A stretch of DNA of 64,000 nucleotides, taken from the IMG/VR virus record IMGVR_UViG_3300017991_000001, positions 62,001 through 126,000 of that record. One strand, written 5' to 3'. A model generated the notes under the pieces. That model did no database searches and was not told where the DNA came from. It saw only the letters and a list, made by a program, of their open reading frames with translations. Positions 2,666 through 51,992 of the stretch are shown piece after piece. Position numbers and translations under genes: made by a program. Numbering within the stretch: position 1 is the first letter of the stretch; the number at the start of each line of letters is the position of its first letter.

Positions 2666-3120
2666 TCAACTTCACCGGGGCGGACGTGGAGGTGTTCAAC
2701 CGCCACTTCAGGGACCACCGCCTCGGTTTCGAGAGGATGTACCGCCTGCTCAGCTGCTACAAGTGCGGCAGCCCGCTGGGGTATTTCCTGGGCACCAGGG
2801 AGGACAACGACAAGGCGCTCTTCCTGGAGCTGGACTGGTGCCGCACGTTCGGCGGCGCCCACACCCCCAAGAACGGCACCCGCATCAACATCGAGGAGTG
2901 CATGTTCTACGAGGTGGAGAAGTGCCTGTGCGAGGCCTACGGCTCGCGCCCGGCCTTTCGCATCGTGCCCACCCCGATGGCGGGCTTCGCCGCCTTGATG
3001 AACGGCTTCCCCATGACCAAGGCAGCGCTGCTGGAGTTCGACTTGGACGGGTGGGACCTGGGCGAGAAGCTGGATAACCTGAATACGAAAACCGATGCCG
3101 GCATCGAAAAGGAGACGTGA
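2653..3120 (+). CDS. Dispersed member of paralog family A (CxxC/CxC)
   Basis: HFRDH..RMYR..CYKC..PLGYF...CLC...ALLEFDLDGWDL matches the 16.7-21.6 kb array consensus. Confidence 0.7.
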   Translation: MVGVVNFTGADVEVFNRHFRDHRLGFERMYRLLSCYKCGSPLGYFLGTREDNDKALFLELDWCRTFGGAHTPKNGTRINIEECMFYEVEKCLCEAYGSRPAFRIVPTPMAGFAALMNGFPMTKAALLEFDLDGWDLGEKLDNLNTKTDAGIEKET

Positions 3121-16414: not shown

Positions 16415-16694
16415 CGGCGACGGTACGCCGGCCAGCGCGCTGGCCGACGAGCTGGTTGCGAAGTTCGTGTTCGAGCCTGACGGCAAGGGCGACTTCCACT
16501 GCGAGACGGGGGAGCATTACCTGGCGGATAAAGTTGCCCGGCATATGGGGACCGACGCCGACCTTGTCGAGTCGTTCGCGAACATCTTCTTCAACCGCGT
16601 CATGGAGCGGTTCATGGAGCCACACTCCGAGCTGCACGCCAAGTGCCTGAAGCTGGTGGAGGAAATGAAGGAGAAGGAGGATGCCGACAATTAG
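16407..16694 (+). CDS. Hypothetical protein
   Basis: Intact ORF with RBS. Confidence 0.55.
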   Translation: MTDGDGTPASALADELVAKFVFEPDGKGDFHCETGEHYLADKVARHMGTDADLVESFANIFFNRVMERFMEPHSELHAKCLKLVEEMKEKEDADN

Positions 16695-17040
16695 CATGAG
16701 GGCTGCCGGGCCCGGTACGTTGCGGGAGCACCCCATCGTACAGCACTTCCTGAAGCATTACCGTTCGCCGCATTTCTATACGCTGAGGACGTGCACGCGC
16801 TGCGATTATCAGATCGGGTATTTCGTCGACGAGAACGATCGCCTGTTCTACGACAGCGGCTGTGAGTGCACCTACCACAACGGCCCGAACATCGAGCCGC
16901 GCAGTTGGGAGATGCTGGTGGAGTACTTCCGTGCGCACCAGCCGGAGATGGACCTGCTGCTGGCCCTGAACATCGACCGGGCCGGCAACGACAATCCGAT
17001 TGCGGAGGATGACGAACCCGAAGGGGAAGACGATGAATGA
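16681..17040 (+). CDS. Family A paralog 1 (CxxC/CxC)
   Basis: HFLKHY..FYTLRTCTRC..IGYF...CEC...W..L...DLLLALNID. Confidence 0.7.
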   Translation: MPTISMRAAGPGTLREHPIVQHFLKHYRSPHFYTLRTCTRCDYQIGYFVDENDRLFYDSGCECTYHNGPNIEPRSWEMLVEYFRAHQPEMDLLLALNIDRAGNDNPIAEDDEPEGEDDE

Positions 17041-17251
17041 CGACGTCTGCTGGCTGGTCACCGTGCTTCACGACGGGCGATTGCTCAAATGCGCCGTGAA
17101 GTTCAAGCGCGACAGCGTGCCCGGCGACATGGTCAGGTATCCTACGGAGTGGCGCACGGAGGTCGGAGAGAGGCTGTTGCCCGAGCACGTCAGGTCCGCG
17201 GGTCCGATCGTGGCCGTCGAGGAGATCTTCGAGGTGCACGTGCGTGGATGA
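17033..17251 (+). CDS. Hypothetical protein within array A
   Basis: No family motif; overlaps both neighbours. Confidence 0.5.
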   Translation: MNDDVCWLVTVLHDGRLLKCAVKFKRDSVPGDMVRYPTEWRTEVGERLLPEHVRSAGPIVAVEEIFEVHVRG

Positions 17252-17633
17252 CAAGATGAGGGCGGTCTTGAGCTACATTGAGGAGCGCGTCGCTTCCAGG
17301 AACCTGGAAGAGGAAGTGGAGTGGTTCAAGAGGCGCCAACGGGCGGCCGAGATGGTTCCGGCGCTGAAGGACTTGCTGGTCAGGGAGGAGGCGTGGCTGT
17401 ATCGCGTGACTGGCTGTACGGCCTGCTATAGCCACTGCAAGTTTCACATTCCCAGCCTCCGCAGGAAAGAGGAGCCTTCCCTGTTCGCGAGTTTGTGCAA
17501 CTGTCACCAGTCCAACCTCATTGTGCTGGGATGGGAGGAGGTGGCGATGTTCTTCCTGAACCACCCCGGGCTGCTGGACCTGTACACGGCGTTCCAGATG
17601 GACGCCGTGGACGTAGAGGAAGCGAATGTCTGA
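17244..17633 (+). CDS. Family A paralog 2
   Basis: LYR..CTAC...CNC...WEEV...DLYTAFQMDAVDVEE. Confidence 0.7.
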   Translation: MDDKMRAVLSYIEERVASRNLEEEVEWFKRRQRAAEMVPALKDLLVREEAWLYRVTGCTACYSHCKFHIPSLRRKEEPSLFASLCNCHQSNLIVLGWEEVAMFFLNHPGLLDLYTAFQMDAVDVEEANV

Positions 17634-18057
17634 CCACTTGAAGAGTTTGCCGTGGTGGGAAGTTGAGCGGCTTTCACGGAAGTTGAGCGTAATGGCGCGG
17701 CGCCACTTCTCGGCGCACCGCCAGGGACGGCTCTACGCGCTCGAGCGTTGCAAGGAGTGTGGGGTGGCCGGAAAGGGGTGGTACATTGCCCTGAACGGGG
17801 AGCCGGTTTACCAGGACCGGTGTTTCTGTACGTTGAAGGGGGAGCGCAAGGACGACGTACATCGGGCGATGTGGGCCCACGTGGGCGATTTCCTGCTCCG
17901 GCACCCGCACCTGGCGGACATGCTGTTCGCGTTCGACATGGACGCCGTGGAAGTGGAGGAAGCCGATGTTTGCTCCGAAGCACAGCGGGTCCCCGAGGCG
18001 GCGGGGGCGGCCCAAGTTCGAGAAGATCATCACGCCCAAGTTCACCAAGGACGTTGA
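17626..18057 (+). CDS. Family A paralog 3
   Basis: HF..H..RLY..RCKEC...CFC...W...DMLFAFDMDAVEVEE. Confidence 0.7.
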   Translation: MSDHLKSLPWWEVERLSRKLSVMARRHFSAHRQGRLYALERCKECGVAGKGWYIALNGEPVYQDRCFCTLKGERKDDVHRAMWAHVGDFLLRHPHLADMLFAFDMDAVEVEEADVCSEAQRVPEAAGAAQVREDHHAQVHQGR

Positions 18058-18418
18058 GGAGCTCAAGAAGTGGGACACGGACATACGGGATATCCTCACG
18101 GACGACTCGATCATCCGTCAGTTCAGGGCCGAGGACCTGGCTCCGAGACTGCGGGAGCATTTCGAGAAGCACCGCCTTAGGCGTCTTTACCGCACGCACC
18201 GGTGCCCGCGCTGCAACGTGGCCGTCGGGTTCTTCCTGCCGGCCAAGGGCGAGCAACTGCGGGCGTCGTTGCGTTGCCATTGCGTGCTGAAGGGGGCACG
18301 TGACAAGTCGGCGCCGACCACGTTCGCGAACCTGGCCGATTTGCTGTTGGATCACAAGCGCGAGCTGGATGCGCTGCTGGCTTTCGACATGGACCTGATT
18401 GATCTGGAGGAAGCGTGA
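17966..18418 (+). CDS. Family A paralog 4
   Basis: HFEKH..RLYRTHRCPRC..VGFF...CHC...ALLAFDMDLIDLEE. Confidence 0.75.
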   Translation: MFAPKHSGSPRRRGRPKFEKIITPKFTKDVEELKKWDTDIRDILTDDSIIRQFRAEDLAPRLREHFEKHRLRRLYRTHRCPRCNVAVGFFLPAKGEQLRASLRCHCVLKGARDKSAPTTFANLADLLLDHKRELDALLAFDMDLIDLEEA

Positions 18419-18762
18419 GCGTTCTGAAACGAATGCATGACAACGAGGGTGTGATAAACGCCCGGTGGGAGCTGGTCGACGCCCTGGTGAACCACTTCTA
18501 TCTTCATCGCGTGGACAACATGTACAGGACCGGCCGGTGCTCGTGCGGACAGCCCTACGGCTACGTGATGAATTCGCACGGACAGCTGAACTTCAAGGAG
18601 AGTTGCGTGTGCAACGAGAGCCCGATACGGGCCATGAAGAAGGTGCTCGCCCACACCTGGAGCGACCTGGCGGCCCTGCTCTACGGGAAGCAGCAAGAGC
18701 TGTCGATGCTGTTCGACTTTGACATGGACCTGCTTGATCTCAAGGAGGGCAACGGCGATTAG
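18415..18762 (+). CDS. Family A paralog 5
   Basis: HFYLH..NMYRTGRCSC..YGY...CVC...W...MLFDFDMDLLDLKE. Confidence 0.75.
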   Translation: MSVLKRMHDNEGVINARWELVDALVNHFYLHRVDNMYRTGRCSCGQPYGYVMNSHGQLNFKESCVCNESPIRAMKKVLAHTWSDLAALLYGKQQELSMLFDFDMDLLDLKEGNGD

Positions 18763-19072
18763 CCTGGTACGCGAGAAGTGGCGTGTGTCCCAGTTGTTGA
18801 AGGCGCATTTCGAGAAGCACCGGGTGAACAGGATGTACCGCGTGGGGCGGTGCGAGAAGTGCCGGAAGCCATACGGGTATCTGCTCACCACCCACGCGCT
18901 GTTGTTCCTGGAGCGGTGCAAATGCTGCCAGAACAAGCGCCGGGCCGCGAGGACGAAGTATGCGCACAGTTTCGTGTGGATGGCCGGGGAGATGATGAGC
19001 AAGAAACGGGAGCTGTCGATGTTGCTCGACTTCGACATGGACCTGCTTGATCTGGAGGACGAAGGGCGTTGA
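18758..19072 (+). CDS. Family A paralog 6 (possible ATT start)
   Basis: HFEKH..RMYRVGRCEKC..YGY...CKC...MLLDFDMDLLDLED; start inferred 9 nt after AAGGAGG. Confidence 0.7.
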   Translation: MSLVREKWRVSQLLKAHFEKHRVNRMYRVGRCEKCRKPYGYLLTTHALLFLERCKCCQNKRRAARTKYAHSFVWMAGEMMSKKRELSMLLDFDMDLLDLEDEGR

Positions 19073-19416
19073 GCAGCGTAAGCAAGGATGGTTGGGACCT
19101 GGCGTTCAAGCTGTTGAGGCACTTCCACGCTCACAGGATGAACAGGATGTACCGCACGGGCCGTTGCGACGCATGCAATTCTCCTTACGGGTATGTTCTG
19201 GAGGAGAAGAAGGAGAACGGCAAGCGGTGGAACTTGTTCTTCCGCGAGACTTGCGAGTGCTGGCGCGACGGGTTGCGCCTGGGCCGGAAGGGTATGGTGC
19301 ACAGCTGGTTCGACATCGCCAACGAGCTGCAGGACAGGGAACAGGAGCTTCACATGCTGTTCGACTACGACTTGGACCTGGTGGATCTGCAAGATGGCAC
19401 GCTTTCGCGAGCCTGA
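19069..19416 (+). CDS. Family A paralog 7
   Basis: HFHAH..RMYRTGRCDAC..YGY...CEC...MLFDYDLDLVDLQD. Confidence 0.75.
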   Translation: MSSVSKDGWDLAFKLLRHFHAHRMNRMYRTGRCDACNSPYGYVLEEKKENGKRWNLFFRETCECWRDGLRLGRKGMVHSWFDIANELQDREQELHMLFDYDLDLVDLQDGTLSRA

Positions 19417-19771
19417 CAAGTGGCAGGTGGGTGTACAGCTCTGCGCTCACAGCATGGAGCATTGTCTGAAGGGCCGTTTCTACCGATGGCGCCGGTGCGA
19501 GGACTGCGGGGAACCGATCGGGGTGTGGCTGCACTCCTGCTTCGACCCGAAGTACAGGGACGAGTGTACGTGTGATGTCGGGGCGGCCCGCCGCCTTACG
19601 ATCGGGAATAAGATGCTGTGGGGCGAGGTGGCGGAGGTGATCATGCGCACCCCGGCTGCGATCGACGCCTTCCTGGCGTATGACCTGGACATTCTGGACT
19701 TGGAGGAGGGCTGTGAAACAAACCGAGCTGACGCGCGGCTTGAACACGCTGCACAGCGACAAGACGTATAG
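19394..19771 (+). CDS. Family A paralog 8
   Basis: RFYRWRRCEDC..IGVW...CTC...W...AFLAYDLDILDLEE. Confidence 0.75.
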   Translation: MARFREPDKWQVGVQLCAHSMEHCLKGRFYRWRRCEDCGEPIGVWLHSCFDPKYRDECTCDVGAARRLTIGNKMLWGEVAEVIMRTPAAIDAFLAYDLDILDLEEGCETNRADARLEHAAQRQDV

Positions 19772-20171
19772 GCAGACCTCAACTTGGGAATTGAGGCCGG
19801 AAGGTACGGCTAAGCGCGCGACGCGGATTCTGCGTGTGCGGGATTACTTCATCCACAACTACACGCACCGTTCGCGGGTTTTCATGCGGGACGTCAAGGC
19901 CCGCTCGTTCAAGCGCCGTTGCGTCAACTGCGGCGCCATACTGTACGTCTTCGTCTACAGGGCGTTCCCGTACATGGTGGGTTGCTATCACGGCAATGCG
20001 AAGGAGTTCGACAAGATCCCGGGCATCAAGTATGGGCGCTTGTATCGTCTCTTTTGGGAGCAGGTGGGTCGCTGGCTTGAGGACGACAAGTTCTTCGATC
20101 TGTTGCTGCTGGCGGGTACCGATCCGGTGGACCTGGAAGACGATGGCGCTGAAACCACCGACGTCGTGTGA
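19713..20171 (+). CDS. Family A paralog 9
   Basis: YFIHNY...RRCVNC...GCYH...W...DLLLLAGTDPVDLED. Confidence 0.7.
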   Translation: MKQTELTRGLNTLHSDKTYRQTSTWELRPEGTAKRATRILRVRDYFIHNYTHRSRVFMRDVKARSFKRRCVNCGAILYVFVYRAFPYMVGCYHGNAKEFDKIPGIKYGRLYRLFWEQVGRWLEDDKFFDLLLLAGTDPVDLEDDGAETTDVV

Positions 20172-20478
20172 CGTCTTCACGATGCGCGTGCGGGATAGTT
20201 TCATGGCACGTCGCATGGATGGTCGCGTGTTCCGCACACGGCGCTGTCGGCGCTGCAAAGAGGCAGTGGGCTTCTTCGTGTACCCGGCCGAGCCCTTTGA
20301 GGTCGTGGCACCGCAGCTTCACTTTCGTCCTTGCCAGTGCGGAGGGGCGAAGCAGAACTGGCCTGTGTTATGGGAGGCGCTGTCCGCGTGGGCATCGAAG
20401 AACCCGAAGGCGTGGGACTTGTTTCTGGCGTTCGACATGGACATGCTGGATCTGGCGGATGCCGACGTCAAAGGCTGA
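20143..20478 (+). CDS. Family A paralog 10
   Basis: RVFRTRRCRRC..VGFF...CQC...W...DLFLAFDMDMLDL. Confidence 0.75.
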   Translation: MALKPPTSCDVFTMRVRDSFMARRMDGRVFRTRRCRRCKEAVGFFVYPAEPFEVVAPQLHFRPCQCGGAKQNWPVLWEALSAWASKNPKAWDLFLAFDMDMLDLADADVKG

Positions 20479-20896
20479 CATCACGCGCGAGCTGCGCAGG
20501 CTGATGCGGGACGCATCGAGGTATGGACGCTACTACATGGAGCACCACCTCTCGGAGAACGAGACCTTTCTCAAGGTGGCGCAGTACTTCTACAGCCACT
20601 TCGAGTTCAGCAGTTTGCATCGCAAGGTGATCCTGAGGGACGTGAAGCGCAGGTCCTACCGGACCGACCGCTGCGAGATCTGCGGTGAGCCGGCCTACTG
20701 GTTCATCTACGGCGGGGTGCTGTTCGCGTTCCGGTGCTACCACGGCGACCGCAAGCGCCACCCGTCCAAAGGGGGCGGGCACGTGTACAAGGAGCGGTGG
20801 CGGTGTATTTGGCGTTATCTGGAGGACGACAGGGTGCGGGACATGCTGTTGTCGTTCGGGATCGACCAGGCGGAGTTGGAAGATGGCGCTGACTAA
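20459..20896 (+). CDS. Family A paralog 11
   Basis: RSYRTDRCEIC...RCYH...W...DMLLSFGIDQAELED. Confidence 0.7.
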   Translation: MPTSKADITRELRRLMRDASRYGRYYMEHHLSENETFLKVAQYFYSHFEFSSLHRKVILRDVKRRSYRTDRCEICGEPAYWFIYGGVLFAFRCYHGDRKRHPSKGGGHVYKERWRCIWRYLEDDRVRDMLLSFGIDQAELEDGAD

Positions 20897-21314
20897 CGAA
20901 CCCTCGACGTGGGAGCTTGGCGAGGCAGACTGGTGGTTCGACAAGCGGGATCTGGAGAACGACCCGCTCCTGCGGTATTTCGTCGAACACTACGACATAT
21001 GGCACCCGGCGATGCCGCCCGCGGACCTGGTCGGGCGGTCGTACCGCATTCTCATCTGTACCCGGTGCGGCGAAGTTCATCGCTGGTTCGTCTTCCAGGA
21101 GAGGACGCTTTGGCGGTACGGGTGCAAGTGCAGCTCGCCGAATCAGGCGTTTCGGGCGTTTCGGGAGCGCCTGACGACGCTGAGGAACTACTTCGAGGCG
21201 AACCCGCGGCTGACGGACCTGCTGCTGGGTTTCGGGATCGATGCCGTGGAGGCGAACGGAGGGGAACGCGAGGATGTTCTCGGATCAGCAGATAGCAGGC
21301 AGCTCCTTCATTAG
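20883..21314 (+). CDS. Family A paralog 12
   Basis: YFVEHY..RSYR..CTRC...CKC...DLLLGFGIDAVE. Confidence 0.7.
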   Translation: MALTNEPSTWELGEADWWFDKRDLENDPLLRYFVEHYDIWHPAMPPADLVGRSYRILICTRCGEVHRWFVFQERTLWRYGCKCSSPNQAFRAFRERLTTLRNYFEANPRLTDLLLGFGIDAVEANGGEREDVLGSADSRQLLH

Positions 21315-21642
21315 GACCTACAAGGACAACCCCATCTTCCGACACTTCATGAAGCACTACATCTACGGCGGCAGAATCAGCCCGAAGAGGTCGTATCGGC
21401 TGGCGCGTTGTCCGGGGTGCAAATGTTGCAGGGGTTGGGTGGTCAACGTTCACGGGCACGCCTTCTACTACGCGTGCAGATGCTGGAACATAAAGAACGA
21501 ACTCGTGAACGAGTCCTGGGATTACATATTCAGGATCTTCGACCACAACCCGCCGCTCAAGGACTTTCTGTTGGCGTTCGGGATGGACGCCGTGGCCGTG
21601 GAGGAGATGCATGAAACTTCGGACACCGAGGTAAAGGGATAA
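21274..21642 (+). CDS. Family A paralog 13
   Basis: HFMKHY..RSYRLARCPGC...CRC...W...DFLLAFGMDAVAVEE. Confidence 0.7.
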   Translation: MFSDQQIAGSSFIRTYKDNPIFRHFMKHYIYGGRISPKRSYRLARCPGCKCCRGWVVNVHGHAFYYACRCWNIKNELVNESWDYIFRIFDHNPPLKDFLLAFGMDAVAVEEMHETSDTEVKG

Positions 21643-29907: not shown

Positions 29908-30957
29908 ATGCTGGTCAAGATGTATCCGCAGGAGAAGGGCCTGACGTTTGGCCTGAACAAGTACCCGGGCGCCGAGCTGCGCGGCTGCGTCAACGATTCA
30001 GAGGACATGGCCAACGAGCAGGTCAGGGCCTACGACTGGGACCCCGGCAATATCCGGCTCTTGACCGACTTCCGCTGCACGCGTAAGGAGATGTTCAAGC
30101 GGCTGGAGTGGCTGGTGGACGTGAAGAAGGGTGATCGTGTCTTCTTCCACCAGAGCGGGCATGGCGTGCAGTTTCCCTCCCGCTCCTACAGCGGCGAGCC
30201 CGATGGCCTGCTCGAGGCGTTCTGCCCGATCGACTTCGCGTGGTGTCTGGACGGGATGGTGACCGACAAGGACTACGTGGAGTTCTTCAGCCGCATCCCC
30301 AGAGGGGTTGAGTTCACCTGGGTGAACGACTCCTGCCACTCGGGCGACCTGACCCGGGCGCAGCCCGGCAACCCGCACGGCCCAACGATCGTCCCGCGGT
30401 CCTATCCCGTCCCCGAGGACATCGCCTGGCGGCACAAGGGCCTGAAGACCCGCAACATCAAGAGCATGGAGCGGGCCATGGTCTGCGGGAAGATGGACGT
30501 GGGTTTCGTGAGTGCCTCACGCTCCGATCAAACAGCAGCCGACACCTTTGTCAACGGACGCCCCTGCGGGGCGCTCACGCATTACTTCCTCCAGACATTG
30601 CGAGGAAATCGCCAGCTCCCGCTCGAAACGGTGGTGAGCATGACGAGGGACACGTTGCGGGCGCAGGGTTATACCCAGGAGCCGCAGGCCGAAGGCCGGC
30701 GCGTGGACAAGCCGTTCATGATAAACAGGGCGGTTCCCGGTGCGCCCGGTGCTGTAGGTTGCATCAGCCAAACAGGGCCAACCGGTCCGGTCGAGGAGCA
30801 GGTGGGCGTTACCCACGCTTCCACCCCCGAGTCTCACTTAGATCCGGTCGGACCGGGCGGTGTGACCGGCGTTATGGGTCCGGCTGGGACCTACTTGCTG
30901 CCTTTCGACAAGGAAGGCGCGCAGAACGTCTGTCCGCACTGCGGGAAGACAAAATGA
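29908..30957 (+). CDS. Metacaspase / caspase-like peptidase C14
   Basis: GLNKY..AELRGCVND, FFHQSGHG, CPIDF, DSCHSG (His-Cys dyad intact). Confidence 0.9.
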   Translation: MLVKMYPQEKGLTFGLNKYPGAELRGCVNDSEDMANEQVRAYDWDPGNIRLLTDFRCTRKEMFKRLEWLVDVKKGDRVFFHQSGHGVQFPSRSYSGEPDGLLEAFCPIDFAWCLDGMVTDKDYVEFFSRIPRGVEFTWVNDSCHSGDLTRAQPGNPHGPTIVPRSYPVPEDIAWRHKGLKTRNIKSMERAMVCGKMDVGFVSASRSDQTAADTFVNGRPCGALTHYFLQTLRGNRQLPLETVVSMTRDTLRAQGYTQEPQAEGRRVDKPFMINRAVPGAPGAVGCISQTGPTGPVEEQVGVTHASTPESHLDPVGPGGVTGVMGPAGTYLLPFDKEGAQNVCPHCGKTK

Positions 30958-31073
30958 AGAACGGTTCCAAGAAGGCCCTCTATGCCCTGCTGGCCATAGG
31001 GCTCGTGCTGCTGATCTTCGGCGTGGTGCTCTTCGCCCACGTGGCGTTCCGGTTCATGCTTGAAACGAGGTGA
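30954..31073 (+). CDS. Small single-pass membrane protein
   Basis: KK followed by ALYALLAIGLVLLIFGVVLFAHVAF. Confidence 0.5.
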   Translation: MKNGSKKALYALLAIGLVLLIFGVVLFAHVAFRFMLETR

Positions 31074-31076
31074 GTC

Positions 31077-32003
31077 ATGGCTTGGATCATCAGTGCTGTC
31101 CTCTTCCTGTGTTGGGGCGCCTACATCGGCCGCCACGACGGGAGCGCCGACTCGGGCGGCCTCAAGCATCTCCTCTATCGCATCTGGCGTCGCCTGGCCT
31201 TCTGGGCCGGCGACGTCAGGTTCTGGTGGGAGTGGTACTTCGGGTTCATCCCGCTACCGCGGTTCTCTTGGGCGCACCATGAGTACGCCATCACCTACGA
31301 GACCCTGCTTGATGCCTGTAAGCGCTTGCAGCCAGGCGACATCATGCTGGCCACCAAGAAGGGCTACATCTTCTCCAACTCGGCAATCCCGGGGTGTTTC
31401 AAGCACGCCGGCATCATCGTGCAAGGCCCCGACTCCGCGAGGGTGCAACCGGTAGACCCCCCTGACAGGCCGTTTTCGACCCCCGACCTCGCGAGGGTGC
31501 AACTCGTTGAGGCGATCTCCGAGGGCGTGGTCAGGCGCCACCCCCTGTGGGCCCGGGGCGACCTGATGATCTTCCTCAGGCCCAAGCACGCGCAGGACAA
31601 GGACCGGGAGAAGGCCGTTGAGATCGCCCACGCCATCGTCGGCTGCAAGTACGACGCCTCCTTCAAGTTCAACATGGAGGAGGAGCTGAAGCTGCTGGCC
31701 GAGCAGGAGGAGAGCCCGCTGGTCGAGAACGTGGAGGAGCTGCACCGTTCCATGCGGAACCTCCGCTCCGAGTACGATATGTCCTTCAGCTGCACGGAGG
31801 TTGTGGCGACGGCCTGGTGGCATATGCGCAAGCGGTTGGGGATCGCCCGCAAGAAGGTCAGGGGCAGGTTGTGCATCACGGCCGACCAATTTTTAAACAG
31901 GGACTTCAAGGTCGTGTGGACAAATGTTACAGTGGGGCAGGCTGAGAAGGCCGGCCTTGGTGAAGAGGGGGTTCGGGAGCTGAAAGCGTACTGGAACGAA
32001 TAA
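31077..32003 (+). CDS. Permuted papain-like amidase (YiiX/YaeF, NlpC/P60 superfamily)
   Basis: LQPGDIML, FKHAGII, LVEA...GV, KYD, FSCTEVV; hydrophobic N-terminus. Confidence 0.8.
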   Translation: MAWIISAVLFLCWGAYIGRHDGSADSGGLKHLLYRIWRRLAFWAGDVRFWWEWYFGFIPLPRFSWAHHEYAITYETLLDACKRLQPGDIMLATKKGYIFSNSAIPGCFKHAGIIVQGPDSARVQPVDPPDRPFSTPDLARVQLVEAISEGVVRRHPLWARGDLMIFLRPKHAQDKDREKAVEIAHAIVGCKYDASFKFNMEEELKLLAEQEESPLVENVEELHRSMRNLRSEYDMSFSCTEVVATAWWHMRKRLGIARKKVRGRLCITADQFLNRDFKVVWTNVTVGQAEKAGLGEEGVRELKAYWNE

Positions 32004-32449
32004 TGGGCTTCAGAAACATCCACCCAGTCAAGATTGAGAAGAAGTGGGGCCACGAGCTTTGCGTGGTCACCAAGCACCCCGTGGACGGACCGGCCGGCTA
32101 CTCGGGTAAGATCCTCACACTCGACTACGGCTGGCAGTGCTCGATCCACTATCACGTGCACAAGACGGAGACGTTCTTCGTGCTGGAGGGGAAGCTGGTC
32201 CTTGAGCTTTACGACCTGAAGGCGTCCTTCGTCAAGACGGCGCCCCCCAGGAACCCCTCCATGGACGATGTCCGGTTGGCGATCTCGACGGTGCTGGAAC
32301 CGGGACAAGGCATGACGCTGGACCCGCTGACGCCGCACCGCTTCTGGACCGTGACGCTGGACGGATGCAAGTTCGTGGAGTTTTCCACGCCCGACGACCC
32401 GTCGGACAGTTACCGCATCACGACATCGGGACCGAAAGATGCAAAGTAA
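32003..32449 (+). CDS. Cupin (sugar isomerase-like) protein
   Basis: KKWGHE, YSGKIL, SIHYHVHKTETF, PHRF, EFSTP..SDSYR. Confidence 0.85.
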   Translation: MGFRNIHPVKIEKKWGHELCVVTKHPVDGPAGYSGKILTLDYGWQCSIHYHVHKTETFFVLEGKLVLELYDLKASFVKTAPPRNPSMDDVRLAISTVLEPGQGMTLDPLTPHRFWTVTLDGCKFVEFSTPDDPSDSYRITTSGPKDAK

Positions 32450-32679: not shown

Positions 32680-33279
32680 ATGTCTCGCGACGAGTTTCAG
32701 ATCCTGTTTAACCAGGAGCCAACCGCCCGCGATTACTTTCCAGAGGGGCTCGACGAGAACCCGCTGGACCTGTTCGTCAAGGCGTTGGCGAGCGGGAACT
32801 ACGCGGAGACCGGGTTGTCGGGGCTTCGCCGCAAGGGCACGATTTCGGACCTACCGGCGCACGCCAACGCGACCCAGATTGTAGACTACCAGGACAAGCA
32901 CGGACGGCTGCCCCGCCGCATTTCCAAGACACTGCGCACGGCTGAGGGAGGAAACGTCTTTATTCATGGCTTGTGGTTCTACTCGGCGACGGGCGTGCTG
33001 TGCGACACGTTTTTCCACGCTGCAGGTGAGAAGCACTGGGACGCCAGCTGGGACGAGGAAAGCTTCTTTTGCACGCGTGCTCCAAGGGCGCCTGGCAGAC
33101 ACACGCCGTTCCTGCACTCGGAAGAACATAACACGGAGCGTCCTCCGTTTGCTGTCGCGTGGTGGTGGGAGCGGCTGACGAAGCTGCCGTTGCCGCCGAT
33201 GATGAATTATATGGTGAACAAGGAGCTGACCTTCTCGCAACTGGCCGACTTGCTGACGGTGGGCGCGCCATGGACATAA
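32680..33279 (+). CDS. Family B paralog 1 (GVLC...GAPW)
   Basis: YSATGVLCD...WWW..LPL...FSQLADLLTVGAPW. Confidence 0.75.
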   Translation: MSRDEFQILFNQEPTARDYFPEGLDENPLDLFVKALASGNYAETGLSGLRRKGTISDLPAHANATQIVDYQDKHGRLPRRISKTLRTAEGGNVFIHGLWFYSATGVLCDTFFHAAGEKHWDASWDEESFFCTRAPRAPGRHTPFLHSEEHNTERPPFAVAWWWERLTKLPLPPMMNYMVNKELTFSQLADLLTVGAPWT

Positions 33280-33713
33280 AGAAGGACTCGCCCCTGATGG
33301 CGTGGATCAAGGCGCTGGGTGACGACAGCTACATCACGCAGTGGAAGGATTACGGCTACCACCCGCCCCAGCTGCGGACCGTGATCTACGAGCCGTCGGG
33401 GACGGGCAAGGAGGCGACACACATCCTCTGGTCGCCGATGGGCGTCCTGGCCGACGCGTTCGTGCAGCGGCACTGCAAGGCGCCGCTGTACTCGATGTGG
33501 GTCGACCGTTGGATGCGGGTCAGCCCCGTGGGCGGCCCGCACCTGTCCTTTGACGAGGCGTGGCCGCTGCCCTGGCCCATCGAGACGTGGTGGAAGAACT
33601 GGCATGCCGACCTTCCTTTCAAGAAAGTAGGGGACTACATGTTTGAACCGCAAGCGAACTTCCGGCAGTTGGCCGACCTGTTGGCTGTGGGGGCACCGTG
33701 GGTGAGCCACTAG
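33270..33713 (+). CDS. Family B paralog 2
   Basis: WSPMGVLAD...WW...DLPF...FRQLADLLAVGAPW. Confidence 0.75.
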   Translation: MDIKKDSPLMAWIKALGDDSYITQWKDYGYHPPQLRTVIYEPSGTGKEATHILWSPMGVLADAFVQRHCKAPLYSMWVDRWMRVSPVGGPHLSFDEAWPLPWPIETWWKNWHADLPFKKVGDYMFEPQANFRQLADLLAVGAPWVSH

Positions 33714-34219
33714 AGTCGTGGATACTCAGCCTGTCGACCAAGGAGTACGAGCAGGAGATGGATTCCCCCATGCTGCGGCGCATCTACAGGGAGGCTGTCG
33801 CCACGAGCGACAACGTGTGCTACCGGGGCCAGCTGCTGAAGAAGGGCGAGAAGATTGTGATCCCGGACAACATTGATCGGGTCGGCGACTCGGCTTTCTG
33901 GGATATGCAGAGGCATCTGGTGACGCTCGGCAAGGTCATCAAGTTCACGGCTTCCGGCGTGCTGTGCCAGCAGTGCCTGAAGTACGCGCCGATGCCGACG
34001 CGCGGCGGCATGTGGGACGGGCTCGAGTTCAGCTGTAAGGGACTCTTCTGTCAGGAGTCGCCGCATCTGCATATGTGGCCGCTGCCATGTGTGGTGCGGG
34101 CCTGGTGGAGCGACTACGAGGATCTGCCGCTGGAGCCGCTGAAACCGTACCTGGAGAACATCAAGATGTCGTTTGACGAGCTGGCTACGCTGTTAGCGGT
34201 GGGCGCGCCATGGGCATGA
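33698..34219 (+). CDS. Family B paralog 3
   Basis: FTASGVLC...WW..DLPL...FDELATLLAVGAPW. Confidence 0.75.
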   Translation: MGEPLESWILSLSTKEYEQEMDSPMLRRIYREAVATSDNVCYRGQLLKKGEKIVIPDNIDRVGDSAFWDMQRHLVTLGKVIKFTASGVLCQQCLKYAPMPTRGGMWDGLEFSCKGLFCQESPHLHMWPLPCVVRAWWSDYEDLPLEPLKPYLENIKMSFDELATLLAVGAPWA

Positions 34220-34647
34220 CGTATTGGGACTACCAGCCGCTGGGACTCTGGATCGAAGGGCTGCGTAACGTCTACAAGGAGATCGATTACGGTGACGACG
34301 CGCCGCCCGATCGCGTGCCGTTGTACACCGGCCACCCGGCGGAGCACGCTTTGAGCTTGAGGAGGTTTTCACCTGCCGGCGTGTTGTGTGCCCTTCTAAC
34401 CCTAAAGGGGCCGTCGGTGGGCGCGCATATGAGCAACGGGGAATTCAAATGGGTGGAAGGTTGCGCCGACCGGCCCGTCTACCGTACAGCGAAGTGGGCG
34501 GACGAAATGCCGGAGCCCGTCATTGCGTGGTGGCACAAGTCTCACGACGACCTGCCGTTCGAGAAGCTGATGCCGTTCCTGACCGACCCGCACTTGCGGT
34601 TCAAGCCGTTCGCTGACCTTTTGGAGATGCACGCGCCATGGGCGTGA
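34210..34647 (+). CDS. Family B paralog 4
   Basis: FSPAGVLC...WW..HDDLPF...FKPFADLLEMHAPW. Confidence 0.75.
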   Translation: MGMTYWDYQPLGLWIEGLRNVYKEIDYGDDAPPDRVPLYTGHPAEHALSLRRFSPAGVLCALLTLKGPSVGAHMSNGEFKWVEGCADRPVYRTAKWADEMPEPVIAWWHKSHDDLPFEKLMPFLTDPHLRFKPFADLLEMHAPWA

Positions 34648-35288
34648 GAGACGAGATCCTGGAGAAGGTGTTCAAGGGCAGCTCCGAGCAGCACGCGATG
34701 CGCTTGAAGCTGGTGACGCCCATGGAGGTGTGGGTGCAGTCGCTGCGCGGACGGCTTGATAACGAACACCGGACGGTATACGAACAGGCCCACACCACGC
34801 AGCTGCGCACGCGTGGCAGTTTCACCAGAGGCGCGGCCAGCGCGATAGCAGACTTCACGAGGGTCAAGATGAAGGAAGAGGGTTTCTGGCGGAAGATCAT
34901 GCCGCCCACGCCTATCGGCAAGTCCACAACGATGGCGCAGACTACAGTGAAGCAGGCGTACAGGAGCACGCCGAACGTGAACGGTGACGTCTTCGGTTTG
35001 GACATATGGGACTACTCGGCGCTGGGCGTGCTGTGCGACCTGTATCTGCGTTTCGAGCGCCAGCACAGGGGCGACGCCTCGTGGCGGGGTAACGAGTTCC
35101 AGTGGTTGGTCAAGGGCAAGTTGAGGAGATCGAATTCATGCAAGAAGGTTCCCACGCCGGTAAGAATGTGGTGGGAACGGCATCACGGGGAACTTCCGTT
35201 CAGGAACCTGAAGGCCTACCTGCGCAACCCGTATCTGAAGTTCGAACAGTTCGCGGACCTGCTGGAGATGCACGGGCCATGGACCTGA
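34638..35288 (+). CDS. Family B paralog 5
   Basis: YSALGVLCD...WW..HGELPF...FEQFADLLEMHGPW. Confidence 0.75.
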   Translation: MGVRDEILEKVFKGSSEQHAMRLKLVTPMEVWVQSLRGRLDNEHRTVYEQAHTTQLRTRGSFTRGAASAIADFTRVKMKEEGFWRKIMPPTPIGKSTTMAQTTVKQAYRSTPNVNGDVFGLDIWDYSALGVLCDLYLRFERQHRGDASWRGNEFQWLVKGKLRRSNSCKKVPTPVRMWWERHHGELPFRNLKAYLRNPYLKFEQFADLLEMHGPWT

Positions 35289-35890
35289 AAGGTTACAAGC
35301 CGCTGCCGCCACTGACGCTGTGGGTGGATGCGCTGCGCAGCAAGGGATATAACCCTACGGACGCGAAGGCGCTCCGCAAGAAACGCAGGATTACGATCGA
35401 CGGCGTCGAGCTCGTCTCGGGCGATAATGTGATGGCCCACGACTCGGGCAAGACGATGTACATACAAGACTGGGCATACTCGCCGATGGGGGTGCTGTGC
35501 GATCTCTACCTGAACTACGTGCCGCTTTCCTACCGGTCCAAATGGCGCTGCGCGTGGAAGGGGCAGTACTTTCGTTGGATGGTCCGTGGCAAGTGGAGCA
35601 GGCAAAAGTCCAGGCATCAGATGCCCACGCCCATCTACGAGTGGTGGAGCAAGCACCACCGCAAGCTGAAGATCGAGCCGCTGAGGCCGTTCCTGAAGGA
35701 CAAGGACCTCAGGTTTGACATGTTTGCGGACCTGCTGGAATTGCACGCGCCGTGGTCGATGGACCCGGCGCTGCTGGGCTACGAAGCTGACCGGCCCAAG
35801 CCTTTGCCTTTTTCCACGTTGCCTCTTGACAGGCATATCCGCGGACCTCGCTTCCGCTGTTTAGAGAAACCCGAGGGAGTAGAGGAGTGA
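35279..35890 (+). CDS. Family B paralog 6
   Basis: YSPMGVLCD...WW..H...FDMFADLLELHAPW plus a tail. Confidence 0.75.
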   Translation: MDLKGYKPLPPLTLWVDALRSKGYNPTDAKALRKKRRITIDGVELVSGDNVMAHDSGKTMYIQDWAYSPMGVLCDLYLNYVPLSYRSKWRCAWKGQYFRWMVRGKWSRQKSRHQMPTPIYEWWSKHHRKLKIEPLRPFLKDKDLRFDMFADLLELHAPWSMDPALLGYEADRPKPLPFSTLPLDRHIRGPRFRCLEKPEGVEE

Positions 35891-36351
35891 TCGGGATCGA
35901 TCACCAGGGGCCGTTGCAGTGGTGGTTGAAGGAGATGAAGAAAGGGTACAAGGACCACACCCGACACGGGTACTACAGTCGCCCGCCGCTATGCCGGACT
36001 GTTGAAACCTTTCGGACGTATTCCCCCGGCGGTGTTTTGTGCCAGGCGTACAGCGGCGTTATGGGCACGCATGGGTTCAGCTACGCCTACGAGGGGCATG
36101 GTCGCCTCTACCCGGAATGTGTACCGTTCGTGTGGCGGACCCGGTGCGGCCGTACGTGTGGCAGCATCTTCAGCGTGCCCAAACCGGTGCGCGAGTGGTG
36201 GGCGAGCCACTACTACAGCGAGCTGCCGTTCAGCGCGTTGATCCCCTATCTCGAAGACAAGAACCTTACGATCGACGCCTTCTCGGTGCTCCTGATGACG
36301 GGGGCGCCGTGGCTGGGTTGTGAGGACAAACCGTTGAAAGGATCGAAATGA
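35887..36351 (+). CDS. Family B paralog 7
   Basis: YSPGGVLC...WW...ELPF...FSVLLMTGAPW. Confidence 0.75.
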   Translation: MIGIDHQGPLQWWLKEMKKGYKDHTRHGYYSRPPLCRTVETFRTYSPGGVLCQAYSGVMGTHGFSYAYEGHGRLYPECVPFVWRTRCGRTCGSIFSVPKPVREWWASHYYSELPFSALIPYLEDKNLTIDAFSVLLMTGAPWLGCEDKPLKGSK

Positions 36352-36524: not shown

Positions 36525-36792
36525 GGAAGACCTGAAAGAGGCGCTGGCCGGCATGTGCTACCAGTTCGCCTACCGCGGCAAGACGAAAGAGGGCCGCCTG
36601 ACCATCTGGACGGGCGGCCTTTCTGCACTGGAGCTGGCGTTTCAGGAGCTGGGGTGGGAGGACCCTCACCCTTACCCGGAAGGGGAATGCCAGAACGAGG
36701 GCTGCTACAACGAGGCGACCTGCGGGAAGCCTACACCCGAGGGTTACAAGTTCCTGTGTGGGAGCTGCGATGCCAAAAAACACTCTCCGTAG
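36514..36792 (+). CDS. Hypothetical Cys-rich protein
   Basis: GGLSALE..F..LGW; C...C...C...CGSC. Confidence 0.6.
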   Translation: MTTEEDLKEALAGMCYQFAYRGKTKEGRLTIWTGGLSALELAFQELGWEDPHPYPEGECQNEGCYNEATCGKPTPEGYKFLCGSCDAKKHSP

Positions 36793-37060
36793 CGTCAAAA
36801 TCACGTTCGACCGGAAGGATCGCTGCATCGACGAATACGGTGTTTGGGTGTGGTGGTACCGGACTTCTAGCCGCTTTGCTATCCAGCAGGCCGATAGTGA
36901 CAACCACGTCGACCCGGACAGAATGATCGGTATCCCACGTAACCTCCGGGTCCTGAAGGCCCTGATCAAGGAGCTGCAGTGGCACGTGACGGACCTGGAG
37001 GCGGACCAGCTGACAAAGGGGACGCTCGATGGAGATACCACCGATGCCGGCGGCACGTAA
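36770..37060 (+). CDS. Family C paralog 1 (EADQL)
   Basis: IGIPRN..VLK...TDLEADQLTKGTLD. Confidence 0.7.
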   Translation: MPKNTLRSVKITFDRKDRCIDEYGVWVWWYRTSSRFAIQQADSDNHVDPDRMIGIPRNLRVLKALIKELQWHVTDLEADQLTKGTLDGDTTDAGGT

Positions 37061-37370
37061 GCGCAAGCGCGTGAACTTCGACGTCAAGATCCCCGTAACA
37101 GACAATCATACGGAGGGGGTGATCGGGGGCTTGCGGCTCACCGACTTCCTTGCCGACGAGCACACACCCGTAGGGAAGGTGTGGTTTACGCCCATAGTCA
37201 GGTGGACGTACCCGAGAAGCGGCAAGAAGAGCGAGACGCGCGGAAACATACTGTCGATCCCGCGCGACCCGAAGGCCCTGCGCAAGATCGCGGCGTTTCT
37301 GCTGGACGTGGCCGACGACGCGGAGGCCGATCAACTGACGAAAGGAACACTCGATGCCGAACCAGATTGA
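37029..37370 (+). CDS. Family C paralog 2
   Basis: LSIPRD..ALR...DDAEADQLTKGTLD. Confidence 0.7.
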   Translation: MEIPPMPAARKRKRVNFDVKIPVTDNHTEGVIGGLRLTDFLADEHTPVGKVWFTPIVRWTYPRSGKKSETRGNILSIPRDPKALRKIAAFLLDVADDAEADQLTKGTLDAEPD

Positions 37371-37629
37371 GCGGGTGATGTTGCCGCTGACGAGGGACGG
37401 TGAGCCGTTCATGCTCGAAGTGCTGGACGACGAGGCGCGCGAACGGGTGTCTTTCCGTCCGGTCATAATGGACAAGAACACGTACGCGAACTACGACCTC
37501 GAGCGGTACGGCGAGATGGTAACCGTACCGCGGGTTGCGCGCGTGTTGCGCGAGATCGGACAGATCCTGCTGGACAGGGCGACGGACATCGAAGCCGATC
37601 AACTGGCGAAAGGGACACTGGATGACTGA
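37354..37629 (+). CDS. Family C paralog 3
   Basis: VTVPRV..VLR...TDIEADQLAKGTLD. Confidence 0.7.
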   Translation: MPNQIERVMLPLTRDGEPFMLEVLDDEARERVSFRPVIMDKNTYANYDLERYGEMVTVPRVARVLREIGQILLDRATDIEADQLAKGTLDD

Positions 37630-37975
37630 GAGCATACCGTATCCGTACGAGTACAACATAACGGTGGGTGGCATGCTGGTGGACACGTGTCACCGGATGG
37701 TTGGTCTGCCCGGACACTTCGAGGTTCGGATCACGCCGTTTTACAGGGGCGGATCGTACGTTGACCGGGGAAACAACGCGTCGCCGATCACCATCCCTCG
37801 AAAGAAGGAGGTGCTGGAGCGGTTCATCAAGGTGTTCCAGGCGGCGATAACGGACATAGAGGCCGAGGCGCTGGCAAGGGGGTTGGAGGAGATCAGGTTC
37901 GAGCACACCGAGACGGGAATCTGCCGGAAGCGTGACCCCGAGACCGGACAGGAGCTGAGAAGGGAGAGCGGATGA
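37622..37975 (+). CDS. Family C paralog 4
   Basis: ITIPRK..VLE...TDIEAEALARG. Confidence 0.7.
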   Translation: MTESIPYPYEYNITVGGMLVDTCHRMVGLPGHFEVRITPFYRGGSYVDRGNNASPITIPRKKEVLERFIKVFQAAITDIEAEALARGLEEIRFEHTETGICRKRDPETGQELRRESG

Positions 37976-38280
37976 CGGATCACGAAAAGAAGGTGCAGGA
38001 CCTGGTTATCGAGTTTCCGCCGAGCTTTGCCGGGTGGTTCAACGCTCGTTCGTGCGGGGTTTGCATCTCTTTCAGGCAAAGAGGCACGAGTCTTCACGAC
38101 ATGACGAGGGAAGACAACGCCGCACCTATGAGGTGTACGAACCCAACCATCGTGTTCCCCAATAATGTCCAGTTCCTGCGCACGCTGAGCGAGGCGCTGG
38201 GGATCGTGGCCGATGACCTGGAAGCCGACAACCTGACCCGGGGCATCGAGGAGGAGAAGGTGAGGGTTTACGCATGGTGA
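37972..38280 (+). CDS. Family C paralog 5
   Basis: IVFPNN..FLR...DDLEADNLTRG. Confidence 0.7.
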   Translation: MTDHEKKVQDLVIEFPPSFAGWFNARSCGVCISFRQRGTSLHDMTREDNAAPMRCTNPTIVFPNNVQFLRTLSEALGIVADDLEADNLTRGIEEEKVRVYAW

Positions 38281-42425: not shown

Positions 42426-42790
42426 GGGCCCGATTTAGATTCGACGGCGGGTACGGAGGATGTGGCAGCACGCCGCGGTTGATCGGTTGGCCGCGTTATC
42501 AAGCCGATCACACAATCAAATGCCAAGACGAAAGTCGTGGCCGGCGACTTCGGCGCAAGCCGGGTCGCCCTCGCTGCTTAACCGACAGCGGGTGAAGGTG
42601 CCCGTACTCCTGGTCCCCAGGTAAGAACGGGAAGGTCCAAAGGGGGATGGCAGCGGGGAAGACTGCTGACGGCAACCAAAGGCTGCTGACGGGGCCGCCG
42701 GGTCCTGGGAAAGACCGAACCCGGATAAGCGTGTAGAGACCCCTTCCGAAGTTCCGGCGGACTTGGGTGCAAATCCCAACGGGTCCACCA
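42426..42790 (+). ncRNA. ssrA: tmRNA (one-piece); tag ORF 42522-42581 = AKTKVVAGDFGASRVALAA*
   Basis: Acceptor GGGCCCG/CGGGTCC with G3-U70, ACCA 3' end, GATTCGAC D-loop motif, GAC plus T-arm TTGGG-TGCAAAT-CCCAA, tag ending ALAA-TAA, 365 nt. Confidence 0.95.
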
Positions 42791-51766: not shown

Positions 51767-51992
51767 GCTGAAGATTATTTCGGACGGCACACCCGAAGGT
51801 ACGCGCCTGGTCGACAGTGTGACGTCGGAGGATTTGAAGTTGCCCATTAAGAGCATTGTGTGGCGGTTTGACGTGGAGAGTTTCCCAACCGCGGAAGTGA
51901 CGCTGTTGTGTCCTCTGGCTACGTTGGTGGCGGATACCGTCATAGGAGGCCCGGATGGACCGGTCGAAAACAAAGGTGGCAGTGATCGGTGA
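51759..51992 (+). CDS. Small hypothetical protein
   Basis: LKIISDGT..GTRLVD. Confidence 0.55.
   Translation: MRRLKIISDGTPEGTRLVDSVTSEDLKLPIKSIVWRFDVESFPTAEVTLLCPLATLVADTVIGGPDGPVENKGGSDR

What the first reader, a model, noticed from the sequence alone, without database searches (positions are those of the whole stretch)
32680..36351. Second array: 7 tandem 'GVLC...GAPW' paralogs (family B)
Seen: seven genes share [YWF][ST]xxGVL[CA] and a C-terminal WW...LP[FL]..L..[YF]L.....F...ADLL..[GH][AG]PW, but their N-terminal regions are unrelated and of different lengths. Like family A, they end in a 'D-L-L' helix after a Trp. Inferred: a conserved C-terminal module with swappable N-termini.
Basis: partly seen in the sequence, partly recalled or inferred. 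Interest (0 to 1): 0.65.

Follow-up and report, generated by a model that had tools for sequence, protein, structure and literature searches.

The report
Jumbo-phage tandem family of small proteins
Seven neighbouring genes of an uncultivated 211-kb phage encode diverged copies of one small, tryptophan-rich protein with no known relatives or fold, and two copies carry short pieces that copy the phage's own capsid protein.

Summary
Window 32680-36351 (+) carries seven real paralogous genes (145-216 aa). Leaving any one out of the profile still recovers it at E 1e-17 to 1e-32, and nothing else in the 211-kb genome matches.

The N-termini are not unrelated: all seven share an N-terminal helix (P-[LM]-x-x-[WF]). 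The length differences come from an insert of variable length between that helix and the GVLC helix. This is one domain with a variable loop, not a C-terminal module with swappable heads.

In five of six internal junctions the next gene's start codon lies inside the P-W codons of the conserved APW end, and a Shine-Dalgarno-like motif lies in the LL-x-x codons. This fits translational coupling.

The family matches nothing in Pfam, PHROGs, NCBIfam, PDB, BFVD or the ESM Atlas. Only about 12 relatives turned up among 1.84 billion representative proteins. It is absent from the five nearest relatives of this phage and is not homologous to family A.

Orthologues evolve faster than flanking genes but under purifying selection (omega 0.27-0.61).

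Unexpectedly, the B5 insert and the B6 tail, and also one family-A member, contain segments homologous to the phage's major capsid protein.

Function is inferred only. The most likely role is a non-enzymatic binding scaffold used as an accessory protein.

The parts
32680..33279 (+). B1, 199 aa, acidic (pI 5.9). Insert of about 60 residues, residues 42-96, between the helix-1 segment (residues 28-41) and the core that begins 8 residues before GVLC (residue 105).
   Evidence: Orthologues are P0011 (L009) and P0023; the clade has 100/99 support.
33270..33713 (+). B2, 147 aa, GVLA instead of GVLC, 11 Trp. It sits on a long branch, has no orthologue in any other contig found, and is absent from L009.
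33698..34219 (+). B3, 173 aa, GTG start. The conserved helix begins at residue 4, so the GTG start is needed to include it.
   Evidence: Orthologues are P0014 (L009) and P0013 (L011), 99/98 support. The database gene call P0009 uses the same start.
34210..34647 (+). B4, 145 aa, the most compact member and the one that was folded: five helices plus a three-stranded sheet.
   Evidence: Orthologues are P0024 and P0025.
34638..35288 (+). B5, 216 aa, basic (pI 9.9), with the longest insert.
   Evidence: A partial orthologue is in L009.
34791..34925 (+). Segment inside the B5 insert that is homologous to the N-terminal arm region of the phage's major capsid protein (about residues 6-51 of P0026; the best core is 34833-34916 = residues 21-48).
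   Evidence: MCP-family HMM against all six-frame ORFs of the genome gives E 1e-8, with noise starting at E 4.8. tblastn gives 57% identity over 28 aa. The segment is also present in the L009 orthologue, E 1.9e-5. Codon positions 1 and 2 are more conserved than position 3.
35279..35890 (+). B6, 203 aa, basic (pI 9.6). It reads 43 residues past the APW end, so the usual overlapping start is lost here.
   Evidence: The first part of the tail ([SA]-M-D-x-x-L-L-G-Y) is shared with P0016 and P0017.
35804..35863 (+). Segment in the B6 tail that is homologous to capsid protein residues 78-97.
   Evidence: 60% identity over 20 aa, 33.9 bits against a noise ceiling of 24.3 bits. HMM E 2.7e-3. Absent from the shorter tails of P0016 and P0017.
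35887..36351 (+). B7, 154 aa, GTG start overlapping the B6 stop (GTGA), with 12 residues after APW.
   Evidence: It groups weakly with P0012 (L011) and P0015.
33245..33279 (+). Example of the dual-use junction. The last codons of B1 hold a GGTGG Shine-Dalgarno-like motif and, inside the P-W codons, the ATG of B2, giving a 10-nt overlap. The same design occurs at B2/B3 (GTG start, 16 nt), B3/B4, B4/B5 and B5/B6 (10 nt each).

Best explanation
Shown: the window is part of a 211,084-bp virus record with direct terminal repeats, that is, an uncultivated jumbo phage. Region 32680-36351 holds seven same-strand, overlapping genes of one lineage-restricted protein family. Each protein is a single Trp-rich alpha+beta domain. 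It consists of an N-terminal helix, an insert of variable length, the GVLC helix, a small three-stranded sheet and three C-terminal helices ending in APW. The duplications are old, because orthologues of individual paralogues sit in other phage contigs. Copy number varies from 3 in L011 to at least 4 in the truncated L009 contig (which lacks B2) to 7 here. The proteins evolve two to three times faster than flanking genes but under purifying selection. The starts of five members lie inside the previous member's conserved last codons. Inferred: the genes form one transcription unit and are translationally coupled. The residues conserved across the family are G, L, P, W, C and F, with no conserved acidic, basic or His residues, so the domain is most likely a non-enzymatic scaffold. 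Its variable insert, and in B6 its tail, would give each paralogue a different binding partner. I take the array to be a set of accessory proteins that bind host or phage partners, in the manner of other virus multigene families. In B5 and B6 the displayed piece copies conserved motifs of the phage's own capsid protein. These two therefore probably engage whatever normally binds those capsid segments, either an assembly partner or a host factor that recognises capsid protein.
For: Genome identity and copy count. Family reality. Coding frames. Fold of B4: pLDDT 82.6, pTM 0.77. Invariant columns across 18 family members are G, L, P, W, and the near-invariant ones are L, C, F, W, L. Junction design. 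Orthology groups and array sizes in L009 and L011. Rates against L009: dN 0.26-0.56 and omega 0.27-0.61 for B1, B3, B4 and B5, against dN 0.13-0.28 and omega 0.19-0.29 for three flanking genes. The insert evolves faster than the core (dN 0.47 against 0.34), and both have omega below 0.5. Narrow distribution: 19 hits in 1.84e9 representatives including the seven themselves, and none in the five nearest relatives by capsid protein. Capsid protein identity of P0026. Capsid-like segments.
Against: The function rests on absence of catalytic signatures and on analogy. The complex prediction of B5 with the capsid protein gave no answer. Pairwise dN/dS gives no sign of positive selection. Isoelectric points are mixed (5.2-9.9), so some members could bind nucleic acid instead. 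The capsid-like pieces could be inherited relics of a decayed capsid-gene duplicate: relatives G005, G008 and G024 carry such pieces, at least one of them in a 38-codon open frame that looks like debris.
Confidence: 0.4

Rival explanations
1. The family proteins are virion or procapsid cargo (internal or ejected proteins). The conserved domain or the capsid-like segments would direct them into the head, as the targeting sequence does for the tandemly encoded T4 internal proteins.
For: Two members carry capsid-protein-like segments that keep the capsid family's invariant residues. The genes form a tandem, fast-evolving array of small proteins. B5 to B7 are basic.
Against: Only two of seven members have such segments. 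The array lies about 57-60 kb from the capsid gene, among enzyme-like accessory genes rather than in a structural module. No protease-site or proteome evidence exists. The complex prediction gave no answer.
Confidence: 0.15
2. The capsid-like pieces have no function of their own. They are leftovers of a partial capsid-gene duplicate that were absorbed into neighbouring fast-evolving ORFs. The family is an accessory family whose role has nothing to do with the capsid.
For: All three pieces in this genome come from the first 137 residues of the capsid protein. Relatives carry similar scattered pieces, one in a 38-codon frame and one in a frame with a stop. The two G005 ORFs look like a rearranged mini capsid gene. 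The B5 segment is less conserved between the window and L009 than the B5 core.
Against: Codon positions 1 and 2 are more conserved than position 3 in the pooled three pieces (about 0.70 against 0.54 over 93 codons), clearly so in the family-A and B5 pieces; in the 20-codon B6 piece position 1 (0.50) is below position 3 (0.60). The pieces keep many of the residues that are invariant across 25 capsid orthologues, though several are substituted. The B5 piece has survived a divergence of dS about 1. No fragment of any other gene was found in the arrays.
Confidence: 0.25
3. The proteins are nucleic-acid-binding regulators, for example temporal transcription or translation factors, diversified to recognise different sites.
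For: B5, B6 and B7 have pI 8.9-9.9, with Lys/Arg-rich stretches in the sheet region. The domain is a small alpha+beta one with helices.
Confidence: 0.1
4. The domain is an enzyme or toxin-immunity-type protein of a known superfamily that is too diverged for the searches used here.
For: The Cys of GVLC is nearly invariant. The best ESM Atlas shape match was a NADAR-domain cluster (TM 0.45 by the query). Tandem arrays of small alpha+beta proteins are typical of immunity-protein loci (own knowledge).
Against: B2 replaces the Cys by Ala. There are no other conserved polar residues. A TM of 0.45 on 108 residues with 0.20 by the target is within noise. There are no Pfam, NCBIfam, PHROGs or PDB sequence hits.
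Confidence: 0.07

Closest known systems
Tandem internal-protein genes (IPI, IPII, IPIII) of T4-like phages (own knowledge, not tested here)
   Same: They are small, fast-evolving proteins encoded side by side. They share one conserved piece while the rest differs, and copy number and content vary between related phages.
   Different: The shared piece in T4 is a short N-terminal capsid-targeting sequence that the head protease removes. Here the shared part is a whole domain of about 110 residues, and the variable part is an internal insert. There is no sequence or fold relation, and packaging is not shown.
Multigene families and gene 'accordions' of large DNA viruses, such as the ASFV MGF families and poxvirus K3L amplification (own knowledge)
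   Same: They are lineage-specific tandem paralogue arrays with variable copy number and elevated protein divergence, generally acting on host functions.
   Different: Those are in eukaryotic viruses and their families have partly known targets. Here the paralogues are old (23-43% identical over the aligned stretches), not recent amplifications, and the host is unknown.
Family A array of the same phage (window about 16681-21642)
   Same: It is also a same-strand tandem array of small paralogues, and one member also carries a capsid-protein-like segment.
   Different: Family A has a CxxC...CxC zinc-ribbon-like core and an acidic FDMDxxDLE-type end. The profile-profile comparison with family B gives probability 0.1%. 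The two are not homologous.
HK97-fold major capsid protein family of this phage clade (P0026; phrog_2522; PDB 6wkk gp27)
   Same: The B5 insert and the B6 tail match profile positions 15-60 and 87-106 of the capsid family and keep several of its invariant residues.
   Different: Only 20-45 residues match. The family-B domain itself has no similarity to the capsid protein, so these are embedded fragments, not capsid paralogues.

Membership tests
Any Pfam-A, PHROGs or NCBIfam family | A profile match at or near the curated threshold | tested here: not met
   Pfam on the seven proteins, and on all 18 members of A2, gives nothing below E 0.05 and nothing recurrent. The best PHROGs hit is E 0.81. 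NCBIfam gives none.
Any solved or predicted fold (PDB, BFVD, ESM Atlas) | A structural match to the B4 model clearly above background | tested here: not met
   hhalign of A2 against A3 gives probability 0.12% and E 0.49 over 17 columns.
HK97-type major capsid protein | Homology over the capsid fold (N-arm, E-loop, P and A domains) | tested here: not met
   Only short segments match, in B5 (45 profile positions) and in the B6 tail (20 positions). B1-B4 and B7 have no match.
Translationally coupled operon | Start codon overlapping or abutting the upstream stop, with a ribosome-binding motif inside the upstream gene | tested here: met
   All six internal junctions overlap by 4-16 nt and have GGTGG or GGAG-type motifs 4-15 nt upstream. 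Coupling itself is inferred and not measured.
Anti-defence or defence proteins catalogued in PADLOC | A match to a catalogued model | not tested
   The PADLOC library holds defence rather than counter-defence proteins and was not run. No anti-defence library was on hand.

The most novel reading that the evidence does not exclude
The family-B scaffold, and independently a family-A member, is used by this phage to display peptides copied from its own major capsid protein (N-arm motif, E-loop strand, spine-helix region). The peptides would act as molecular mimics. They could be decoys that occupy host immune sensors of capsid protein without triggering them, or competitors that time or restrict capsid assembly. 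That would make these arrays a phage-encoded library of self-mimicking peptides.
Probability: 0.15. Interest if true: 0.85.

Novelty: new variant of a known kind. Interest (0 to 1): 0.5.

Why it matters
Large phages carry many tandem families of small proteins of unknown function, and these are prime candidates for host-takeover and counter-defence factors.

This family is well defined. It has seven members here, clear orthology groups in two other phage contigs, a confident model without a known fold, and a variable loop on a fixed scaffold.

It offers a concrete handle that such families usually lack. Two members embed conserved motifs of the capsid protein, a protein that several bacterial immune systems are known to sense (PMC9712102; bioRxiv 10.1101/2024.07.29.605636).

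If the mimicry reading is right, it would be a new way for a phage to manage capsid sensing or capsid assembly. If it is wrong, the locus still documents how gene fragments are recruited into fast-evolving phage genes, and how a conserved protein end can double as the ribosome-binding site and start codon of the next paralogue.

Tried and rejected
- **Word-index protein search.** B6 found only itself. The family alignment added only three close orthologues.
- **Locus search with A1.** The search for related loci on alignment A1 failed because no conserved stretch was long enough. With B1 it found only another contig of the same phage (L010, 100% identical).
- **Cultured phage genomes.** blastn (distant mode) with the whole array found nothing. 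tblastn with the distant relative P0019 found nothing.
- **ESM Atlas feature search.** Scores of 0.76 or lower, uninformative.
- **Complex prediction of the capsid protein with B5.** Score 0.00, verdict 'no answer'. This is neither support nor evidence against.
- **AlphaFold of the capsid protein from 25 close orthologues.** pLDDT was 52, too poor to map the fragments onto structural elements with confidence. Naming the pieces as N-arm, E-loop or spine helix therefore rests on position along the HK97-type sequence and on my own knowledge of the fold.
- **Sequencing runs.** I did not try another route, so there is no expression evidence.
- **Promoter and terminator scan.** Nothing above shuffled expectation.
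- **PHROGs on ten neighbours of the capsid gene.** One unnamed hit only.
- **Contig L008.** It first looked like a natural recombinant. It is 100% identical to L009 up to about position 2038 and 100% identical to the window after that. That pattern is what an assembly chimera in a mixed sample would give, so I did not use it as evidence of recombination.
- **Literature search on paralogue arrays in jumbo phages.** It returned only plant and animal gene-family papers.
- **Rejected ideas.** An antisense or non-coding origin is ruled out by GC3 and dN/dS. Recent amplification is ruled out because paralogues are 23-43% identical over the aligned stretches and have separate orthologues.
Full report
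**Where the window lies.** The window is bases 62001-126000 of a 211,084-bp IMG/VR virus record with direct terminal repeats, estimated complete. GC is about 62% with a steady positive GC skew, and nearly all credible genes are on the + strand. This is an uncultivated jumbo phage.

Its capsid protein (P0026, genome 154924-155832, outside the window) was identified by two independent matches:
- phrog_2522 'major head protein' at E 4e-5, over most of the profile;
- the solved capsid protein gp27 of PDB 6wkk at E 1.2e-5, over residues 64-299.

P0026 has more than 1750 homologues, many on contigs of 150-235 kb. The phage therefore belongs to a widespread clade.

**The observation.** Seven overlapping + strand genes fill 32680-36351. 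Coordinates are in the parts list.
- All seven carry the [YWF][ST]xxGVL[CA] motif, a P-x-P-[VI]-x-x-W-W motif, and a C-terminal helix ending in LL-x-x-[GH]-[AG]-P-W.
- Pairwise BLASTP E-values run from 1e-5 to 1e-28.
- A profile built from any six members finds the seventh at E 1e-17 to 1e-32, and nothing else among the 3667 six-frame ORFs of the genome.
- Third-position GC is 0.78-0.89 in the proposed frames.
- Orthologue comparisons give dN/dS of 0.27-0.61, so these are real, selected genes.

The N-terminal parts are not unrelated.
- All seven members, and every relative found elsewhere, begin their conserved part with a helix carrying P-[LM]-x-x-[WF]-[IVL]-x-x-[LM]. The Pro is invariant in the seven.
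- Several pairwise alignments span nearly the whole proteins, for example B2-B4 over 144 aa, B4-B6 over 154 aa and B1-B6 over 178 aa.
- The length differences lie in a leader before that helix and, above all, in an insert of very different length between it and the GVLC helix.
- In the AlphaFold model of B4 (18-sequence alignment, pLDDT 82.6, pTM 0.77) the N-terminal helix and everything from the GVLC helix onward are confident, and the insert is not. The order of elements is helix, insert, helix, three short strands, three helices.

The better description is one domain with a hypervariable loop. The suggested kinship with family A fails: hhalign probability is 0.1%.

**Junctions.** In five of the six internal junctions the next gene starts inside the P-W codons of the preceding APW end (CC-ATG-G, or CC-GTG-G at B2/B3). 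Overlaps are 10-16 nt. A GGTGG or GGAG motif lies 11-15 nt upstream, inside the codons for LL-x-V-G or LL-E-M. The last eight codons of each gene therefore also serve as the ribosome-binding site and start of the next, which is the classic design for translational coupling. Coupling itself is inferred.

This dual use may add to the conservation of the protein end, but it does not explain it. B7, whose successor is unrelated, and B6, which reads on for 43 codons, both keep APW. The C-terminal block also has the highest model confidence.

**Relatives.** An exhaustive HMMER search of 1.84 billion representative proteins found 19 proteins at E of 0.001 or better, seven of them the window's own. 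Context look-ups gave the following.
- **L009.** A 4.2-kb contig, about 70% identical in DNA to the window, with the same flanking genes. It carries orthologues of B1, B3, B4 and B5 but no B2.
- **L011.** A 10-kb contig of a more distant phage. The array follows the same cupin and 70-aa genes, with an unrelated 217-aa gene between them and the array. The array has three members: one B7-like, one B3-like and one B6-like.
- **Tree.** The B1, B3, B4 and B5 orthology groups have 99-100% support. The duplications therefore predate the split of these phages, and copy number ranges from 3 (L011) to at least 4 (truncated L009) to 7.
- **Distant relatives (P0018-P0022).** These lack the APW end. One sits singly in a bacterial contig and one in a phage-like contig.
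- **Nearest clade members.** None of the five nearest clade members by capsid identity (68-82%; three of them at least 90% complete) has the family. The same tool found all seven copies in the phage's own genome.

**Rates.** Against L009, B1, B3, B4 and B5 have dN of 0.26-0.56. The three flanking genes have dN of 0.13-0.28 at similar dS. The inserts change faster than the cores (dN 0.47 against 0.34), but both are under purifying selection.

**Known families.** There is no match in any of the following:
- Pfam, PHROGs or NCBIfam;
- PDB by sequence;
- Foldseek against PDB and BFVD;
- the ESM Atlas;
- 50,697 cultured-phage records.

The residues conserved across the whole family are Gly, Leu, Pro, Trp, Cys and Phe. 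No acidic, basic or His residue is conserved, and B2 replaces the Cys. I read this as a structural scaffold rather than an enzyme.

**An unexpected link to the capsid protein.** An all-against-all comparison of the genome's ORFs joined families A and B through one outside protein, which is the capsid protein.
- tblastn of the capsid protein against the genome gives three hits of 52.8, 41.6 and 33.9 bits. The noise ceiling is 24.3 bits.
- A profile of 25 capsid orthologues gives E 2.6e-11, 1e-8 and 2.7e-3, and the next hit is at E 4.8.

The three hits are:
1. the N-terminal extension of the family-A member at 17966-18418 (capsid residues 93-137);
2. the insert of B5 (about capsid residues 6-51);
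3. the tail of B6 beyond APW (capsid residues 78-97).

Further properties of these pieces:
- They keep many of the residues that are invariant among the capsid orthologues, though several are substituted.
- DNA identity is only 62-68%. Pooled over the three pieces, first and second codon positions are better conserved than third (about 0.70 against 0.54 over 93 codons). This holds clearly for the family-A and B5 pieces. In the 20-codon B6 piece the first position (0.50) is below the third (0.60). The captures are therefore old, and at least the two longer peptides appear to have been maintained since.
- The L009 orthologue of B5 still matches the capsid profile (E 1.9e-5).
- No fragment of any other gene was detected in B1-B7.

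**Similar pieces in relatives.** Relative G005 has two adjacent small ORFs carrying capsid positions 95-138 and 288-311. G008 and G024 also have pieces, one in a 38-codon frame and one in a frame containing a stop. Scattered capsid-gene fragments are thus a recurrent feature of the clade. At least some of them look like debris, which keeps a neutral 'relic' reading alive. A structure-based test of B5 binding to the capsid protein returned no answer.

**Most likely mechanism.** I commit to the following. The array is one translationally coupled unit, and it makes seven versions of a non-enzymatic scaffold. The variable loop, and in B6 the tail, gives each version its own partner. These are accessory proteins acting on host or phage components, and they are maintained and diversified in a narrow phage lineage.

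B5 and B6 probably engage whatever binds the capsid protein's N-arm and E-loop motifs. Host immune proteins that are triggered by capsid proteins are known (PMC9712102; bioRxiv 10.1101/2024.07.29.605636). A decoy or assembly-modulating role is therefore conceivable, but it is untested.

Shown here: family, architecture, junction design, distribution, rates and capsid-like segments. Inferred: coupling, the non-enzymatic nature, partner diversity, and any role of the capsid-like pieces. The rivals are virion cargo, neutral relics, nucleic-acid binding and a hidden enzyme family. They are listed with their tests in the rival explanations.

**Limits.** Only one member was modelled. The alignments are shallow. 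The host is unknown; one capsid homologue is labelled as coming from a Phycisphaerae metagenome bin. L008 was set aside as a probable assembly chimera.

Noticed in passing
window 16681-21642, plus 2653-3120: Family A is a tandem array of about 13 small paralogues, plus one outlying copy. It has an invariant CxxC...C pattern (zinc-ribbon-like) and an acidic FDMDxxDLE-type end. It is not homologous to family B.
   Followed up: partly
window 17966-18418 (segment 18002-18136): This family-A member has a unique N-terminal extension that is 56% identical over 45 aa to capsid protein residues 93-137. Its E-value against the capsid-family profile is 2.6e-11.
   Followed up: yes
window 36758-38280: A third tandem array directly downstream has at least four small paralogues, each ending in a D-x-E-A-D-Q-L-x-K-G-T-L-D-like motif. 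They have no Pfam match.
   Followed up: no
window 42426-42790: The phage encodes a full-length tmRNA gene (Rfam RF00023, 93.6 bits; ARAGORN predicts a 19-residue tag peptide ending in ALAA).
   Followed up: no
window 29908-32449: Directly upstream of the array lie a caspase-like C14 peptidase (E 2e-19), a C92 permuted-papain amidase-like protein, and a cupin / D-lyxose-isomerase-like protein. The last two are syntenic with the arrays in L009 and L011.
   Followed up: partly
L008 about 2038 (corresponds to window about 34690): Logan contig L008 is 100% identical to L009 on the left of this point and 100% identical to the window on the right. This is probably an assembly chimera of two co-occurring strains, though a very recent recombinant cannot be excluded.
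   Followed up: yes
L100 3102-3570, minus strand (relative G005, 216 kb): Two adjacent small ORFs carry capsid-protein positions 95-138 and 288-311, followed by a shared short domain that itself resembles a capsid A-domain helix. They look like a rearranged remnant of a capsid-gene duplicate. G008 and G024 also hold stray capsid pieces.
   Followed up: partly
window 35756-35803 (start of the B6 tail): The first part of the B6 tail ([SA]-M-D-x-x-L-L-G-Y) is conserved in the B6-like proteins P0016 and P0017 of other contigs. It loosely resembles the N-terminus of B6 itself, so it may be a fossil of the start of a lost downstream paralogue fused in frame.
   Followed up: no
window 51955-52938 and 60271-61815: These encode a PfkB-family carbohydrate kinase (E 3e-30) and a protein with a LigD 3'-phosphoesterase domain (E 2e-10), both unusual auxiliary genes for a phage.
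   Followed up: no
genome 123820-126951 and 206727-210262 (partly outside the window): A further seven-member paralogue family is split between two distant genome regions (all-against-all BLASTP).
   Followed up: no
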